In this document: positions 16,781-52,300 of the stretch, piece after piece
Numbering within the stretch: the first letter of the stretch is position 1
How the letters are laid out: each line of letters starts with the position of its first letter
Source of the DNA: Camelus ferus
Lineage: Eukaryota
DNA: 64,000 nucleotides
Direction of reading: 5' to 3'
NCBI RefSeq assembly: GCF_009834535.1
Contig: NC_045711.1
Location: 47,306,001 to 47,370,000 of the forward strand
The notes under the pieces: model-generated
Database searches by the model: none
What the model was told of the DNA's origin: nothing
What the model saw: the letters and a program-made list of their open reading frames with translations, nothing else
Program-made: the position numbers and the translations under genes

Positions 16781-18630
16781 ATCTCAGTAGCAGGCTAGTG
16801 CATCCCAGGACTGCGCCCCCTGGCCCTGTGTCAGGTGAGACCACTCTGGAACCTGGGTTGTTAGCCTCCCCACCCTCTAACCCCTGGGGTTGTTCCCAGG
16901 CGCCGAAATCTAGTAGTGTCCCAGGCCTCACTGCTCCTGCCCAGCCCCTTCTGGGCTGCCCCGCCTGGGCCTGAGGCTCCATTCCTGCTACTTCACCCTG
17001 TTCCTTTCTTGTGGTGAGGAAGCAGGAGCCTGAGTAGGCGCCCCAGTCGCCTTCTCCCTCTCTCTCCCAGACCACAGGGGCTACCTCTCTGGTCCCAGAA
17101 GCAGAACGTGGTAGGGTCATCTGAATCCAGCTTTGGGAAGGAAAAGTCCCTGCCCTAAACCACTGTACCACCCCACCCCACCCCCACCATCAGAGAAGGC
17201 CCAGGCACCAAGGCAGGACTCCCAGGGCTTAGGGATAGGCAGTGAGATGAGGGGGAGCTTCAAGTGACTGATATGTGGTCCAGAAAGGGGTGCATGGAGG
17301 GGTGGAGGGTGCCTTTAGGTTCCCATTGGTTTAGGGAAAGAGTAACAGACTAGGAGTGGAGAGACCTGGTTCACAGAGGTACATACAGTACACATTTGTT
17401 GATAGAATGAATAAATTAATGTATTTTTTTCAAGTGACTTCTTCAAATTCAGCCTCAGTTTCCTCTTCTTTTAAAATAAGAGGACACGGCTGCATGTTAG
17501 AATCATCTGGGGAGCTCCTAAAAATGATCCATGCTGAGAATGCATGGATCGCTACTATATGCTCTCTTTGAGTAGTTCTTCTTAAGTTCTGTGTGATTCT
17601 GGCTTTTCCTATTGCCCTCCACTTCCCCCACTCAGTCCCTGCATCCTTTCAGGGGGTGGCAATTTTATTTTCCTCAGCTGCTGGTAAGCTCTTCTCTGGC
17701 TGACCTCTTTCTCTGGAGGAACAGAGCCCACCTAGCTTCACATCAGCATCTCTAGATTGGAAGAGGGCAGGGCTAGCAGCCAGGGAGCTGGCTGAGTGTG
17801 GGTCAGGATAGGGAAGGGAGCTTAGCTTTCTCTGGTGGGGAGAATTCCTCTGGAAACTGGCACTGTAGCTGCACCCCAGGGAGGTGAAGTCCCCACTAGA
17901 GGAAAAGGGGTGGGGGCCAGGCATGGGAGTGGGTTTGCTGGGGCCGAGGCAATCCAGCCAGGCAGGTCGCTGGGGGGAGTGGTGTAAAGCAGTGAAATGC
18001 TCTTCACTGAACATGTCTCAGGGATGAAAGGAAGGCTTTCTCCAAAATCTCTGAACCTCCTTTGGGCTTCAGGAAGTTGGGTCACTTCAAGCTTCAGATT
18101 TCAGAAACAGACAATCTCCCTCTCCCCAACTGTGTTCTAAGTTAAACTGGGGAAGCTGAGATGGGTCTAGGAATCCCATTTGGGCTGGCAGCTAGTCTAT
18201 GGGGGTGGGGGAAATGCCACCACCCCTGTGCCGGCCTGGGCAGCTAGGGTGGGGATGGTTCTAACACTGTACTGTAGGTGTATCCGATCTACCAGCCTGG
18301 GACTAACCCAATACCTAGGATGAGGTGGGTCTTATAGGAGGGATCACCTAGGGGAAGGTAGTCTCCCATTATCCTCTGCATGGTGGAGAGCCTCACACCT
18401 TCAACCCTTCCTAGCACTTCCAAATTCTCTTAACTGATCTTTAGTCCCCACCTAGAGGTGCCTTCCTCTTTTTACCTGGGGGTGGGAAAGGAGCACTCTG
18501 TGGCGAGGGTGACCTGGGCTAAGTCAGAAATTAAGCCGGTTACTTTCCACACTTCACCTCTTCTTTGCCCCGTTTAGGTCCCACCTGAGGTGTCCTTGAC
18601 CTTCCCTGTCTCCCACCTCGGATCCCGGCA

Positions 18631-19761
18631 ATGCTAACCGCTGTCTGCGGCTCTCTGGGCAGCCAGCACACGGAAGCTCCTGCTGCCTCCCCACCGCGCC
18701 TCGACCTGCAGCCTCTCCAAACATACCAGGGCCACACGAGCCCGGAGGCCGGGGACTACCCCTCCCCGCTGCAGCCTGGAGAGCTGCAGAGCCTCCCGCT
18801 GGGCCCCGAGGTGGACTTCTCACAGGGCTATGAGCTGCCGGGGGCCTCCTCTCGGGTAACCTGCGAGGACCTGGAAAACGACAGTCCCTTGGCTCCAGGA
18901 CCCTTTTCCAAGCTCCTGCAGCCGGACATGTCACACCACTACGAATCTTGGTTCCGGCCGACACACTCAGGCACCGAGGATGGCTCGTGGTGGGACCTTC
19001 ATCCGGGTACCAGCTGGATGGACCTCCCCCACACTCAGGGCGCGCTCACATCACCTGGCCACCCCGGGGCGCTTCAGGCTGGCTTGGGGGGCTACGTCGG
19101 AGACCACCAGCTTTGTGCCCCGCCGCCCCACCCGCACCCTCACCACCTCCTCCCAGCCGCCGGAGGGCAGCACCTGCTGGCGCCTCCCGACGGGGCGAAG
19201 GCTTTGGAAGCGGCCGCTACGGAATCCCAGGGGCTAGATTCCAGTCTGGATGGGGCGGCCCGGCCCAAAGGCTCCCGGAGGTCAGTGCCCCGCAGCTCAG
19301 GCCAGACCGTGTGCCGCTGCCCCAATTGCTTGGAGGCGGAGCGACTGGGGGCTCCGTGCGGGCCAGATGGGGGCAAGAAGAAGCATTTGCACAATTGCCA
19401 TATCCCGGGCTGCGGGAAAGCCTACGCCAAGACGTCACACCTNNNNNNNNNNNNNNNNNNNNNNNNNNNNNNNNNNNNNNNNNNNNNNNNNNNNNNNNNN
19501 NNNNNNNNNNNNNNNNNNNNNNNNNNNNNNNNNNNNNNNNNNNNNNNNNNNNNNNNNNNNNNNNNNNNNNNNNNNNNNNNNNNNNNNNNNCGGGTCTTCA
19601 TGCGCAGCGACCACCTGGCCAAACACATGAAAACCCACGAAGGCGCCAAAGAGGAGGCTGCCGGGGCAGCAGCGGTGGGCGAGGGCAAGGCCGGCGGAGC
19701 GGAGCCCCCCGGGGGCAAAAGCAAGCGCGAGACAGAGGGCAGCGGGGCTCCCTCCAACTGA
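18631..19761 (+). CDS. SP6: Transcription factor Sp6 (epiprofin/KLF14 alias), single coding exon, 376 aa
   Basis: ORF MLTAVCGSLGSQHTEAP...; buttonhead box CRCPNC (19312-19329); C2H2 fingers beginning HNCHIPGCGKAYAKTSH and ending RVFMRSDHLAKHMKTH. N block 19443-19590 plus the preceding 'ct' is exactly 50 codons, which restores the 376-aa length. Exon acceptor tttag|GTC at 18577/18578. Confidence 0.98.
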   Translation: MLTAVCGSLGSQHTEAPAASPPRLDLQPLQTYQGHTSPEAGDYPSPLQPGELQSLPLGPEVDFSQGYELPGASSRVTCEDLENDSPLAPGPFSKLLQPDMSHHYESWFRPTHSGTEDGSWWDLHPGTSWMDLPHTQGALTSPGHPGALQAGLGGYVGDHQLCAPPPHPHPHHLLPAAGGQHLLAPPDGAKALEAAATESQGLDSSLDGAARPKGSRRSVPRSSGQTVCRCPNCLEAERLGAPCGPDGGKKKHLHNCHIPGCGKAYAKTSHXXXXXXXXXXXXXXXXXXXXXXXXXXXXXXXXXXXXXXXXXXXXXXXXXXRVFMRSDHLAKHMKTHEGAKEEAAGAAAVGEGKAGGAEPPGGKSKRETEGSGAPSN

Positions 19762-46300: not shown

Positions 46301-49300
46301 TGCACCTGCCAGGCTGTCGGTCCTTTGCCTCTGGGATGTCTGTGTCTCTGTGTCCTCCTCCATGGCCATCTGCCTCTCTCCTGGCTTTGGTGGTTTTCCT
46401 CACTCTGAGAGTGAAACTCCCCCACCTCGACTTGCCAGGCCTCAGTGACAACCGAGAGACCCAAGAAGGGGAAGCGGACCAGCCGCATGTGGTGCACGCA
46501 GAGCTTTGCCAAGGACGACACCATCGGACGGGTGAGGTGGGGTGTGGGCCCTAAGATGCTGGGGGGAGGCTCTGAAGAAGCCCCTTCAACCTCTCCCCTT
46601 CGTCTACAGGTGGGTCGTCTCCATGGCTCTGTTCCCAACCTGTCTCGCTACTTGGAGTCCCGGGACCCCTCTGGCCCCCGCGGGCTGCCAACCCCAGACT
46701 ATGCCCACCTGCAGCGCAGTTTCTGGGCCCTGGCCCAGAAGGGTGAGTGCGTGCTGGAGGGGTGGCCGGGAGCAGATGGGGAGAAGGAGAGGGAGAGGGA
46801 GGGAGTCTGATAGCCGGCCCCTGCCCCAACAGTGCACAGCTCCCTCAGCAGCGTCCTGGCCGCTCTCACTGCTGAACGGGACCGACTGAAGGACCTGCAC
46901 CAGGGTTCGGAGTTGTCCAGGATGGGGGTGAGGCTGGGGACAGGATGGCCGGTGGGAGGAGAGGGCCCAAGGCCAAGAACTGCAGGCCTGGAGGTGGGAG
47001 CAGACCTGGGCCGGGAAGGGGGTTGGCAGAGGCAGGCCAGGGAGGGCTTCACCTCCCAGCACCTGTCCCCTCACTGTCTCCCTGCAGGTCTCTGAGGCCC
47101 CAGGTGGCCCGAAGCGCCTCCACTCACTGTCCGTCTCCTCCGACACCACTGCGGACTCCTTCAGCTCCCTCAACCCCGAGGAGGTGGGAGCCAGGGTGGG
47201 CTGTGGGCATCTTTCCTCTGGGCCTTTTTTCTCAGCAGGAGTGAAGGCATGGTTGGTTTTCAGACCCAAAACTCCAACCCCTTTCCCAAAACATGGGCAG
47301 CAGCCGCATCTGTGATTCCTTAACTGCACGTAGAGTGCTTTTGCTTTTAAGTCAGAGTCCCGTGAGGCAGCGATTCTAACCCTCAAGTTTACAGACAGGG
47401 AAACTGAGATTCAAAGAATCTAATTGATGGGCCCAGGCTCCCCTACAGCATGGGTTTGAATTTGGCTCCACTGCAGGCTTGCTCTGTGACCCTGAGCCTC
47501 AGTGTCCTAAATCTGCAAAATGGGGGCAGGAATCATACCTACTTCATAGGATGAGTGTGGGGACTGACTGAGCTGGTATGCTCACAGGGCTTGGAGGGGC
47601 TCAGTGTCAGTGGCCAGGAAGCATGAGTGGTGATTATGGAACCCATGTCTCCTTACTCCCAGGCTGGTGATCATTCCCCCAGGCCTGAGTAGCCCACCAC
47701 ACTCGTTCTCCTCTGCATCTTCTCCTGCTCTGCAGGTTCAGACTAGACAATAAAAGTCCCCAGTCAGGCTTCCCTCTCAAGGGAACTGCCAGGTCAGGGG
47801 AGCCCAGCCTGTCTCTCTGGCCGGGCCTCGGGCCTGACCCCCATCTCGCTCCCACAGCAAGAAGCTCTGTACATGAAGGGGCGAGAGCTGACCCCTCAGC
47901 TGTCCCAGAGCAGCGTCCTGTCCCTTGCTGATTCCCACACAGAGTTCTTTGACGCCTGTGAGGTTCTCCTGTCTGCCAGCTCTTCTGAGAATGAGGTGAG
48001 GGAAGAGGGACCCTGGGAATAGAGGAGTAGGGTTCAGGGAGACTAGAATCTATAGATTCCCAAGTCCTTTCCAAGCACCTCAGCCGCTGTCTCTGCATGT
48101 CCAAACATGCTGGGTTTGTGCGGCCCTGCTCAGAAATCTGCTGGGGACCCTTCTTCCAGTTTGATATGCTCTGTCTCCATTGGGTCCTCCTGAAACTTAT
48201 TCCTCAGCTCCACCCCCCAGTCATCTCCCTGTGACCCCATTTTAGCCGCAGCACTCTCTCAGTAATCCCCAACTTCCCTTCCCTTCCTTTTGTGTCCCGT
48301 CAAGTCCCTGAGCTGTCTTGCGCCAGTCGTGAGGCCAGGCCCTCTCTCTCCCAAGGTGGCAGGGCACGTCATGATGCCAGGCCTCCCAGGGCAGTGCCTT
48401 AGGGCTCAGACCACTCCCAGTACATTCCCTTCCCCTTCCCACCAAAGGGCTAGCTGGGCAGATTCTTGCCAGGCTCCGGGCACTGCCCAGCTGTCCAGTG
48501 GAGGCCTAGTCTGCCCGGCCTATCATCTGTCCTGGCACAGGGCTCGGAGGAGGAGGAGTCGTGCACCAGTGAAGTCACCACCAGCCTGTCTGAGGAGGTG
48601 CTGGACCTCAGGGGAGCCGAGCGCTGTCAGAAAGGTGCCAGCCAGGCGGGCAGGAGGGAGGGCTAGAGGTGGGCTCAGAAACAGAGTTTGTCCACAGTCC
48701 AGGCCCCTTGAGAAGCAGTCCCTTGTAGTACTGGTGGGCTAACGGCTTTGGATACTGACTCCAGGGGTGACTCCGGGCGGCGAGGAAGGCTAAGCCGTGA
48801 GCTATGTCGCAGGGGTGGCTCTGGGGTGGGACAGGCTCAGCTGAGGGCTGGCCTCCCCTCCAGTCTTCTGAGAAGGCTCCCATGTGGGCCTGACAGAGAC
48901 ACAGAAGGGCCCACTCAGCCACTTTGTAGCAGCGTGGCTTTAGACGTGTCATTTTGCTTCTTGGAGCCTATTTCCTTGTCTATCAAATGGGCCGAGTAAT
49001 CTACACCCTGACATTGGTTTCTGTGTTTATGAAAGGGAGCAGAAGCCAAGGGTGGGGGCTCAGGAAGGGCTTCTGGGGTGCAGGGTTTCTGTTTCCAGCA
49101 GTGGGAACTGCCCTGTCTGGTTCTTAGCCCTGCTGCCCACCTAAATCCCCAGGAGCTCACCAAGAATTAGCTCTGCAGCCTCCTGCCCCACAGTGAGTCC
49201 ATGCTGGGGCCTGGGAGTGACCATACCCAGGAGCACCTCAGGAGCTCTGGAGGGACCTGGATGCCGGTGCCCAGCGGAGAGTGACAGGCAGGGCAACACC

Positions 49301-52300
49301 CTGGGGCTGTGTTCCAGGGGGAGCTGTGGGGCCTCCCCGCCGCCGATGTCTGCCGGCAGCCAGTGGGCCTGGGGCCGACGTGAGCCTGTGGAACATCCTG
49401 CGGAACAACATCGGCAAGGACCTGTCGAAGGTATCGATGCCTGTGCAGCTCAATGAGCCACTCAACACCCTGCAGCGGCTCTGTGAGGAGCTGGAGTACA
49501 GCAGCCTCCTGGACCAGGCCAGCCGCACCACCGACCCCTGCGAGCGCATGGTACGCCCGTCGCCCCAGCCCAGCCCCAGGCTGCCTCGTCCTCCCAGGAT
49601 CCCGTCTCCCAGAACACCCTGGTGGGCCCTTCCCTGCTGCTAAAGGTTCACCCCAGCCCCCCAGCCCTTGCTGGCAGTGGGGTGGCATCTCCTCTGATCC
49701 CCCGGCGCCCCTCGCCCCCAGGTGTACATTGCGGCCTTTGCTGTCTCCGCCTACTCCTCCACCTACCACCGGGCGGGCTGCAAGCCCTTCAACCCTGTCC
49801 TGGGGGAGACCTATGAGTGTGAGCGGCCTGACCGAGGCTTCCGCTTCATCAGTGAGCAGGTATGGGCCCGGAAGAGGCTGGGGGCGGGGGTGGAGGAGGG
49901 AAGAGGTAGCCAGGTGGCTGGGAGCAGGAAACACAGGGCCTCCATGGAGGCCAGGTCCTGGGATGGAGCAGCTGGCCGTCGGGTAGTTGGGGGAAGGGGC
50001 TCCCCGCTTAGTGTGGGAGCCAGACGTGAAACAAGGAGTTACTGCACCATGTTCTAGAGCTGGGATCATGGAAGCTCATAGGATGTTATTCAGCTCTAGT
50101 GGGTGATCCTGAGCTAAGTCTTGAAGGATGAATTGGAGTTTGCTAGTTGCCCAGGGGGGTGGGGAGAATGGGATGTTGCAGATAGTGTAAAGGAACAAAT
50201 GGAGCATATTTAGGAAGAGTTAGAGACAGGGCTGGAAGATAAGGCAGAGCCAAACCCTGAGGAGCCCTGTAGGTGAAGGTTAGAAAGGGTTGGTTGGTTG
50301 GTTGGTTGGTTTTTAAGTCCTGAAGGCAATGGGGAGCCACGGGAGGGTTTTAAGTGGTAGAGTGACATGCTTAGGATTGAACTTGATAAAGAACATTCAA
50401 GCAGTGGTGTGCCAGGGAATGGGAGGAGGCAAGGAATATAGGCTGTGGGATCCCCAAGTTCAAGGTTCTATATGCGACTTGTTCCAAGGAGGACAAGGCT
50501 GAGTTTTTCTAAGGGTGTGTTGTGGAGGTTGCGAGCTGATAATCAACTTTGGGGGAGAAGATGATGAAGGAAGAGGATCCTCACAGGAGGGCTGGCTTTC
50601 AGGCAGGGCACAGGTAGAGGTCCCACCTGTCACTGCTAGGGGACTTTGTAGGCTTGGGCAGGGTCTCTGGAGGGCACTATACACAGGGTTGGCAAGGAGG
50701 GCCCAGAGGGGAGTGAGTGAGAAGGAAGAATGTAGGGGCCTGAGGGGAAAGGAGAGGATGATGGAATTTGGGTGGTGGCCAAGGGTGAAAGGGACAAGAG
50801 ACCTGGAACTAACTGGTCTTCTGGTCCACAGGGAAACTGGGGGAGGGGTGAGGGCCTCGGGGGGTCTGGGGTCAGGTGCATCCTGAAGAGAACTTCCTTG
50901 CTCATCAAGGTCTCCCACCACCCCCCCATCTCGGCGTGCCATGCGGAGTCTGAGAACTTCATCTTCTGGCAAGGTGAGGGGGGCTGGGTGTGAAGGGCAG
51001 ACAGGGGAGGGGCTGGAACACTTTCTGGTCTTATCTCTGCTGTTCCTCTCCCTCCCTCAACCCAACTCCAGACATGAAGTGGAAGAACAAGTTCTGGGGC
51101 AAATCCCTGGAGATTGTGCCTGTGGGGACAGTCAACGTGAGCCTGCCCAGGTGAGTGTTCCTGAATGCTCCGCAGCCAGGCCCAGGCCACAGGCCATCCT
51201 CCAGGCTGGGACCAGGAGGTGGCAGGGACTGGAGAGAGGCCTGAAGCTGCTTAGGGTGGGGCAGGTTCTGTACATTTTACACCTATGTTCACAGCAGTTG
51301 CCAGTAAAGAAAGGTGAAAAATCTTCCAGCTGGAAGGGCTTGTGAAAGTCATCTGACTGAGTAGTTTTCACACATTCTGACCGTGACTCACAGTAAGGAA
51401 TGCATTTGAGACTTCAAGCCAGTGCACAGTAACCCATAGACACACACGTGCACACACACACATATACACAGAAACCTAAAGTGATTTCAGGACTGCTCAC
51501 AAACCACATTTGAAACACGCTCATCTAACTCATTTTACTGGGGGCACTGCAGCCAGAGGCTGGTGCAGGGGTTGGGGAGGCCCTGGACTTCGGGGTCAGA
51601 AGTCCTCGGTAGGAGTCTCAGTTCTAGTACTGAATAGTTATGCAAGCAGCAAGAAGACTTGACATCTCAGAGCCTTGAGTCTGCTTGTCTATAAAATAAG
51701 AGTAATAAGTAATGCCTGACAGAAGTGCGCAGTAAACAGAGTGATATATGTGAACAGACCGACCATGGTCCCTGGCACCCAAGGCCAGGGACCCAGTCTA
51801 TGGTTTTACCCCCATGACTTAGGCACTCAAGGGCTTTCTCAACAAATGGAGATGTGTCGGCTGAATACTTTCTGTGAAGGCTGCTCTGCTTTATAAATGT
51901 GTCATTCTTCATGGAAGGACGATGAGCTGGAACCAGGGCCCCAGGTTTCCTTCTGCAGACCCATGTGTGTGAACTGCTCCAATGAGACAGGTGCTCCCTG
52001 GCTCAGGGTGGCGCATAGTTCCCCAGAGCTGGCCAGCTGCCCTCCCCCACGCTCTGTCTCTCTCAGGTTTGGGGACCACTTTGAGTGGAACAAGGTGACG
52101 TCCTGCATTCACAACATCCTGAGTGGCCAGCGCTGGATTGAGCACTACGGGGAGGTGCTCATCCGGAACACACAGGACAGCTCCTGCCACTGCAAGATCA
52201 CCTTCTGCAAGGTGGGCACACCACCCTGCCCCTGCCTGTCCGCCCCCAGCAGCTCGCCCCGGGCAAGGGGAGGGGACACCTCCCTAAGCCCCCCGCCCCC

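What the first reader, a model, noticed from the sequence alone, without database searches (positions are those of the whole stretch)
19720..19722. SP6 codon 364 is Ser (c.1090A), apparently the same change as the horse curly-coat allele G364S
Seen in sequence: counting from ATG 18631, c.1090 is position 19720 and the codon is AGC (Ser364), in the tail EPPGGK-S-KRETEGSGAPSN. From memory, human and mouse read PPGGK-G-KREAEG here, and the SP6 variant associated with curly coat in horses (epistatic with KRT25) is reported as c.1090G>A, p.Gly364Ser. SP6/epiprofin controls hair-follicle and tooth development. Inference: a fibre-bearing camelid carries as its reference base what is a coat-shape allele in horse. 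This could be a convergent hair-morphology substitution or evidence that the site is tolerant. KSKR also creates an S-x-R basophilic phosphorylation motif inside a basic, NLS-like patch.
Basis: partly seen in the sequence, partly recalled or inferred. Interest (0 to 1): 0.75.

Follow-up and report, generated by a model that had tools for sequence, protein, structure and literature searches.

The report
Horse curly-coat change in camelid SP6
This animal's normal copy of the hair-and-tooth gene SP6 carries exactly the DNA change (glycine 364 to serine) that is linked to curly coats in horses. No other mammal I could sample has it, but whether it shapes this animal's fibre or is simply harmless here remains untested.

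Summary
Window 18631-19761 (+) is the single coding exon of SP6 (epiprofin), 376 codons with the middle of the zinc-finger region masked. Codon 364 (19720-19722) is AGC, Ser.

Thomer et al. 2018 (PMC5913262) report the horse curly-coat variant as c.1090G>A, p.Gly364Ser. Their genotyping primers map onto the window so that the mismatch primer's 3' end abuts 19720. The amplicon measured in the window is 376 bp, the published size. It is therefore the same nucleotide of the same codon.

Gly is ancestral. All 43 other mammalian SP6 tails I retrieved have it. All 41 therian tails carry an identical K-G-K-R-E-A-E-G core. The window alone reads K-S-K-R-E-T-E-G, so a second core residue (A368T) also changed.

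The gene as a whole is under ordinary purifying selection on this branch (17 synonymous and 7 nonsynonymous changes). The tail is predicted to be disordered. Over deep vertebrate time the site accepts A, T and V.

Most likely this is a lineage-specific, tolerated or compensated substitution, the familiar case of a trait allele in one species being wild type in another. A real contribution to crimped fibre is not excluded. I could not obtain other camelid sequences or reads, so fixation and species range are untested.

The parts
18631..19761 (+). SP6 (epiprofin) coding sequence, 376 codons plus stop, all in one exon
   Evidence: ORF list and translation. Best database hits are all SP6 orthologues, E = 2.5e-204.
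18576..18577 (+). Probable splice acceptor AG of the coding exon, after a polypyrimidine tract, 53 nt before the ATG
   Evidence: Read directly. The horse annotation places the intron boundary at c.-58. This is inference and was not tested.
19443..19590 (.). Masked N run inside the CDS, covering the end of finger 1 to the start of finger 3.
   Evidence: Length preservation is supported by the 376-bp primer-to-primer distance.
19717..19740 (+). Codons 363-370, the conserved tail core. It reads K-S-K-R-E-T-E-G here and K-G-K-R-E-A-E-G in all 41 other therian tails.
19720..19722 (+). Codon 364 AGC (Ser). The ancestral codon is GGC (Gly). The change is a non-CpG G>A transition at c.1090, identical to the horse curly-coat allele.
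19732..19734 (+). Codon 368 ACA (Thr). It is Ala in all sampled placentals. This is the second change in the same core motif and a candidate compensatory partner.
19675..19677 (+). Codon 349 GTG (Val), an in-frame one-codon insertion relative to the 11 other cetartiodactyl sequences
19744..19746 (+). Codon 372 GGG (Gly). It is Ala in the other cetartiodactyls. Third lineage-specific tail substitution.
19721..19750 (-). Site matching the published horse SP6 mismatch genotyping primer (23 of 30 bases, two mismatches engineered). Its 3' end abuts 19720.
   Evidence: Table S14 of PMC5913262; mapping
19375..19395 (+). Site matching the published horse reverse primer (20 of 21 bases). With the site above it spans 376 bp, the published amplicon size.

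Best explanation
The window holds the orthologue of SP6/epiprofin, a zinc-finger transcription factor needed for hair follicles, enamel and digits. On this lineage a single non-CpG transition (GGC to AGC at c.1090) replaced Gly364 by Ser. The site lies in a short conserved motif, K-G-K-R-E-A-E-G, in the disordered tail behind the third zinc finger. This is the same nucleotide change that is associated with dominant curly coat without hair loss in horses. A second residue of the motif (A368T) changed on the same branch. So did two more tail positions: a V349 insertion and A372G. My best reading is that Ser364 is a real, lineage-specific substitution that is tolerated here. It may be tolerated because the site is only weakly constrained, or because nearby changes such as A368T compensate. 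That would make it a cross-species 'compensated deviation' and not a major determinant of fibre shape. Shown here: the sequence, the equivalence with the horse allele, that Gly is ancestral, and the overall purifying selection. Inferred: that Ser is tolerated or compensated, and that it has no large phenotypic effect.
For: Sequence and numbering.
Horse notation c.1090G>A, p.Gly364Ser.
Primer mapping to 19721-19750 and 19375, with an amplicon of 376 bp equal to the published 376 bp.
Gly in 43 of 43 other mammalian tails, and an identical core in 41 of 41 therians.
Polarised codon changes on the window branch are 17 synonymous and 7 nonsynonymous over 324 visible codons. This is similar to Bos (26/6), dolphin (10/3) and hippo (11/5).
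At the site, amphibians have A or T and squamates have V, so small and hydroxyl side chains are compatible with the K-x-K-R-E motif.
The tail has pLDDT below 50 and no secondary structure in a model whose fingers reach 73-89.
The horse variant was scored tolerated/neutral by SIFT and only 'possibly damaging' (0.84) by PolyPhen-2, sits in a low-complexity region, and has no functional assay.
Trait or disease alleles that are wild type in another species are a well-described class, with compensation by nearby substitutions as the main explanation: PMC6606640, citing Kondrashov 2002.
Against: The site is invariant in every other mammal sampled, from monotremes to placentals. That argues for real constraint in mammals and against simple neutrality.
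Two of the 7 nonsynonymous changes on this branch fall in the 8-residue core (P about 0.012). All 3 substitutions in the tail are nonsynonymous, against 4 of 21 elsewhere (Fisher p = 0.017). This could reflect a functional shift and not drift, although both tests are post hoc.
In horses one copy is reported to be enough to curl the coat.
Partial loss of the SP6 C-terminus curls rat whiskers, so hair shape is sensitive to this protein.
No other camelid sequence or read data were available, so neither fixation nor accuracy of the base is independently confirmed.
Confidence: 0.6

Rival explanations
1. Parallel hair-shape substitution. Ser364, alone or together with Thr368, alters the activity or partner binding of SP6 in the hair follicle. 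It contributes to the crimped or woolly fibre of this lineage by the same route as the dominant horse allele.
For: It is the same nucleotide change as the horse allele. Gly and the whole core motif are otherwise invariant in therians. There is an excess of nonsynonymous change in the tail and two hits in the core on this branch. SP6 loss or C-terminal damage gives hairless or curly-whisker phenotypes in mouse and rat.
Against: The horse variant has no functional assay and its causality rests on association within one 13-Mb associated region. SP6 is not among the suri-specific variants in alpaca whole-genome data, so it does not explain the main within-species fleece difference. If the state is shared by all camelids, they differ widely in coat. 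The statistics are post hoc and the look-elsewhere effect is large: roughly 0.6% a priori for this one site, but hundreds of animal trait variants could have been matched.
Confidence: 0.2
2. The horse variant is only a marker in linkage with the true cause, and position 364 is effectively neutral in mammals. The camelid state would then be evidence against causality in horses.
For: SIFT calls it tolerated, it lies in a low-complexity disordered region, and SP6 expression is unchanged. The same residue is a wild-type state here in a gene under purifying selection. Other tetrapods have A, T or V at the site.
Against: Genotypes fitted all phenotypes across 216 horses and the allele was absent from 420 equids of 17 straight-coated populations. 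Gly is invariant in 43 other mammalian tails, which is not what a neutral site would show.
Confidence: 0.15
3. The base is not representative of the species. It is either an assembly or consensus error, or a polymorphism private to the reference animal.
For: The A extends an AAA run to AAAA. No independent reads or second camelid sequence could be retrieved.
Against: It is a substitution and not an indel, and the frame is intact. Three further derived changes lie within 50 nt on the same sequence, as expected for true lineage divergence.
Confidence: 0.08
4. Ser364 creates a regulated phosphorylation site (S-x-R/K) within a basic patch that controls nuclear import.
For: S364-K-R366 fits the generic [ST]-x-[RK] pattern, read directly from the sequence.
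Against: The pattern has almost no specificity. Rat SP6 truncated at residue 323, which lacks the whole tail, is still nuclear (PMC3464675). In the Sp family, import is attributed to the zinc fingers (same paper).
Confidence: 0.05

Closest known systems
Horse SP6 c.1090G>A, p.Gly364Ser (curly coat without hypotrichosis; Thomer et al. 2018, PMC5913262)
   Same: Same gene, same CDS coordinate, same codon change (GGC to AGC), and the same K-x-K-R-E context. The published genotyping primers map to the site, and the window would read as the mutant allele in that HindIII assay.
   Different: In horses it is a rare, dominant, breed-restricted variant on a Gly background with Ala368. Here it is the reference state, it is accompanied by Thr368, Gly372 and an extra Val349, and no phenotype link has been shown.
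Compensated pathogenic deviations (Kondrashov et al. 2002; reviewed in PMC6606640)
   Same: A residue that changes phenotype in one species is the normal residue in another. A nearby second substitution (A368T, four residues away) is a natural candidate compensator.
   Different: The horse allele is a coat trait and not a disease. Compensation has not been tested. The region is disordered, so the usual structural-contact argument does not apply.
AMI rat Sp6 2-bp insertion (PMC3464675) and Sp6-null mice
   Same: They show that damage to the C-terminal part of SP6 bends whiskers or hair, supporting SP6 as a hair-shape gene.
   Different: Those are frameshift or null alleles that destroy finger 3 and also give enamel defects. 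Here all visible conserved elements are intact and only tail residues differ.

Membership tests
SP6/epiprofin orthologue (Sp/KLF family) | Best reciprocal-type similarity to SP6 and not to other Sp paralogues | tested here: met
   All named top hits are 'transcription factor Sp6', E = 2.5e-204 downwards. Visible codons are 93-95% identical in nucleotides to Bos, dolphin and hippo SP6.
SP6/epiprofin orthologue (Sp/KLF family) | Buttonhead box C-x-C-P-x-C upstream of the fingers, and an N-terminal Sp box | tested here: met
   CRCPNC at residues 228-233 and an MLTAVCGSLG start. Both are invariant or consensus columns in a 46-species SP6 alignment.
SP6/epiprofin orthologue (Sp/KLF family) | Three tandem C2H2 zinc fingers near the C-terminus | tested here: inconclusive
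   Only the first half of finger 1 and the last half of finger 3 are visible. The rest is masked (19443-19590). Pfam zf-C2H2 matches the finger-3 remnant at E = 0.041, below the cut-off. The mask length fits three fingers exactly.
SP6/epiprofin orthologue (Sp/KLF family) | Conserved synteny (SCRN2, LRRC46, MRPL10, OSBPL7 downstream) | not tested
   Another note of this scan places an OSBPL7 exon at 49281-49322 of the window. I did not verify it.
Same allele as horse SP6 p.Gly364Ser | Homologous nucleotide and codon, not merely the same number | tested here: met
   The mismatch primer maps to 19721-19750 with its 3' end next to 19720. The reverse primer maps at 19375. The span is 376 bp, the published amplicon size. 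The horse context deduced from the primer is K-G-K-R-E-A-E-G-G-A-A.
Same allele as horse SP6 p.Gly364Ser | Derived state on a Gly ancestral background | tested here: met
   GGC in Bos, dolphin and hippo, polarised with Ochotona and Dipodomys as outgroups. Gly in 43 of 43 other mammalian tails.
Same allele as horse SP6 p.Gly364Ser | Association with curled hair in the carrier | not testable with these tools
   No genotype or phenotype data for this species. SP6 is absent from the suri-specific variant list in alpaca.
Compensated deviation | Fixed wild-type state in the second species, with a compensating change | not testable with these tools
   Only the reference sequence was available. A368T is a candidate compensator but is untested.

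The most novel reading that the evidence does not exclude
Camelids fixed, as their normal state, the very SP6 substitution that dominantly curls the coat of horses, and they rebuilt the surrounding K-G-K-R-E-A-E-G tail motif as well. This change would contribute to the crimped, woolly fibre of the lineage. It would be a case of the same nucleotide change bending hair in a domestic variant and in a wild-type lineage, and it would identify the SP6 tail motif as a hair-curvature control element.
Probability: 0.15. Interest if true: 0.7.

Novelty: new member of a known kind. Interest (0 to 1): 0.4.

Why it matters
The horse SP6 allele is one of very few transcription-factor variants linked to hair curvature, and it has never been tested functionally. 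Finding its exact counterpart as the reference state of another mammal cuts both ways, and either outcome is useful.

- If Ser364 affects the follicle, camelid fibre offers a natural model, and the conserved tail motif becomes a target for study.
- If it does not, the horse variant's causality or its dependence on genetic background needs re-examination.

The question can be answered cheaply by genotyping existing camelid and Zoonomia data and by a Gly/Ser (with or without Ala/Thr368) comparison in cells or mice. On present evidence it remains a verified coincidence with no demonstrated effect.

Tried and rejected
**1. Other camelid SP6 sequences.**
- The protein database shows only representatives of 90%-identity clusters.
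- Two whole-protein and tail-restricted searches and two cluster listings gave many mammals but no camelid.
- An exact look-up of the window protein is impossible because part of it is masked, and I did not fill the mask.

**2. Host-contaminant contigs in metagenomes.**
- An exact 30-mer allowing both alleles found nothing.
- A codon-degenerate pattern found five loci. Only one was a true SP6, and it had Gly. The two 'Ser' hits were chance matches in unrelated DNA.

**3. Independent read-based contigs via spurious ORFs in the 3'UTR.**
- Such ORFs are called on cattle and dolphin contigs, but three look-ups for the window's ORFs were blank.

**4. Single-sequence structure prediction.**
- It was uninformative, with mean pLDDT 41. 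I repeated it with an alignment.

**5. SUMO-site idea (position 364 as the residue before a K-x-E lysine).**
- I considered and dropped it. Gly is not a typical residue there, and sharks replace the Lys by Gln.

**6. CpG hypermutability as an explanation of the parallel change.**
- Rejected. The G is preceded by A in the window, Bos, dolphin and hippo and in horse, as deduced from the primer logic.

**7. Literature.**
- No paper in the library mentions SP6 together with alpaca/suri or camel.

Full report
**What is in the sequence.**
- Window 18631-19761 on the + strand is an ATG-initiated ORF of 376 codons.
- A masked run of 148 N (19443-19590) interrupts it.
- The visible parts carry the hallmarks of SP6/epiprofin: the N-terminal Sp box, the buttonhead box CRCPNC at residues 228-233, the start of zinc finger 1 and the end of finger 3.
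- A search of 5.8 billion proteins returned only SP6 orthologues at the top, with E = 2.5e-204.
- Codon 364 begins at 18631 + 1089 = 19720 and reads AGC, Ser. The tail is ...EPPGGK-S-KRETEGSGAPSN, followed by the stop.

**Is it the horse allele?**
- Thomer et al. 2018 (PMC5913262) describe the SP6 variant as G364S in the main text.
- Their supplementary variant table lists it as chr11:24022045, c.1090G>A, p.Gly364Ser.
- Equal numbering does not prove homology, so I used their genotyping primers from Table S14.
- The 30-nt mismatch primer is antisense to the gene. It maps to window 19721-19750 with 23 of 30 matches. Two of the mismatches are the engineered ones.
- Its 3' end therefore sits directly next to 19720.
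- The reverse primer maps to 19375 with 20 of 21 matches.
- The distance between the two sites is 376 bp, the published amplicon size.
- The primer design creates a HindIII site only if the next base is the variant. This fixes the horse wild-type context as A|GGC AAG CGG GAG GCC GAG GGC..., that is K-G-K-R-E-A-E-G.
- So the window carries the same nucleotide change in the same codon of the same motif. It would type as homozygous mutant in the horse assay.
- The equal amplicon length also shows that the mask preserves length and that the numbering is sound.

**Conservation.**
- From the cluster representatives and two cluster listings I collected 43 other mammalian SP6 tails, 27 of them distinct, from about 30 named species.
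- They cover two monotremes, seven marsupials, ruminants, cetaceans, hippopotamus, primates, rodents and a pika.
- All have Gly at this position. All 41 therian tails have the identical eight-residue core K-G-K-R-E-A-E-G.
- The window alone reads K-S-K-R-E-T-E-G.
- Outside mammals the K-x-K-R-E element persists, but x varies:
  - Gly in turtles, crocodile, tuatara and birds;
  - Val in squamates;
  - Ala or Thr in amphibians;
  - Ile, Met, Leu or Ser in sharks, in a motif that aligns only loosely.
- So the site is strictly conserved within mammals but is chemically permissive over deep time.

**Evolution on this branch.**
- I fetched SP6 DNA for Bos, a dolphin and hippopotamus, with two outgroups, pika and kangaroo rat. 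I then built a codon alignment of the 324 visible, ungapped codons.
- Changes polarised to the window's branch number 17 synonymous and 7 nonsynonymous. This ratio resembles Bos (26/6), dolphin (10/3) and hippo (11/5), so the gene is under ordinary purifying selection.
- Codon 364 is GGC in all three relatives. The change is a non-CpG transition, so hypermutability does not explain the parallel with horse.
- The nonsynonymous changes are unevenly placed.
  - Three of them (G364S, A368T, A372G), plus a one-codon insertion (V349), lie in the last 28 codons, with no synonymous change there (Fisher p = 0.017).
  - Two of the seven fall within the eight-residue core (P about 0.012).
- These tests are post hoc. 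They suggest that constraint on the tail motif changed on this lineage, either by relaxation or by coordinated change.
- A rough prior for this one coincidence is 0.6%. Given the many known animal trait variants that a reader could match, a few such coincidences per genome are expected.

**Structure and function of the tail.**
- An AlphaFold2 model of dolphin SP6 with a 46-species alignment gives pLDDT 73-89 for the fingers. After about residue 345 it gives pLDDT below 50 and no secondary structure.
- This fits the 'low-complexity region 361-373' noted by Thomer et al..
- The motif is therefore best seen as a short linear element in a disordered tail.
- In the AMI rat, a frameshift at residue 323 removes finger 3 and the whole tail. 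The protein is still nuclear, enamel is hypoplastic and newborn whiskers are curly (PMC3464675).
It also supports the general point that partial damage to the C-terminal part of SP6 bends hair.
- For the horse variant itself there is no functional test. PolyPhen-2 gave 0.84, SIFT gave tolerated, and SP6 expression was unchanged.

**Relation to camelid fibre.**
- I could not confirm the species. Other notes of this scan treat the genome as camelid.
- My own data place the sequence close to, but outside, the ruminant, whale and hippo group.
- No paper in the library links SP6 with alpaca, suri or camel.
- A whole-genome study of 3 suri, 3 huacaya, 6 vicuna and 6 guanaco proposes a TRPV3 stop codon for suri. 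It does not list SP6 among the suri-specific variants, in the text or the supplement (PMC10873959).
- So codon 364 is unlikely to be the suri/huacaya switch. Whether it is fixed across camelids remains unknown.

**Verdict.**
- The observation and its equivalence with the horse allele are firmly confirmed.
- The most probable reading (about 0.6) is a lineage-specific substitution that is tolerated or compensated in this background. This is the well-known class in which a trait or disease allele of one species is wild type in another (PMC6606640). A368T is an obvious candidate compensator.
- A genuine contribution to crimped fibre (about 0.15-0.2) is not excluded. It is made somewhat more plausible by the otherwise perfect conservation of the motif in therians.
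- The result also gives modest reason to re-examine the causality or background-dependence of the horse variant.
- It is a neat, cheaply testable lead and not a demonstrated mechanism.

Noticed in passing
window 18967-18969 and 19219-19221: Two further lineage-specific substitutions, P113S and P197T, at positions invariant in all 25 mammalian SP6 sequences aligned (monotremes to placentals). Both lie in the N-terminal region, which has no Pfam match.
   Followed up: partly
proteins P0009 (Myotis davidii) and P0128 (Myotis brandtii): Both annotated bat SP6 models leave the normal reading frame after finger 3, at different points, and lack the K-G-K-R-E-A-E-G motif. This is either a gene-model or assembly error or a real tail loss in Myotis. 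If real, it would bear on how dispensable the motif is.
   Followed up: no
proteins P0004, P0005, P0121, P0129-P0131 (Eubalaena glacialis): The North Atlantic right whale has at least six distinct 'Sp6-like' protein records on two contigs (63.9 Mb and 74.7 kb). Their tails end in ...APCS or ...APCN. This could be a duplication or an unplaced haplotig in a toothless, enamel-less lineage.
   Followed up: no
proteins P0155 (Bos) and P0134 (Lemmus): Both read P-G-S-K-G-K-R-E, with Ser two residues upstream of the focal site. The flank of the core motif accepts Ser while the core itself stays fixed.
   Followed up: no
window 49281-49322: Another note of this scan (s1-149851) reports a displaced OSBPL7 exon-15 splice acceptor here. 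I used it only as a hint of conserved synteny downstream of SP6.
   Followed up: no
loci L002 and L004 (metagenome contigs): Chance occurrences of a G-G-K-S-K-R-E-A-E-G-coding string in unrelated environmental DNA. This is a reminder that a 29-nt codon-degenerate pattern still gives false hits in 241 million records.
   Followed up: yes
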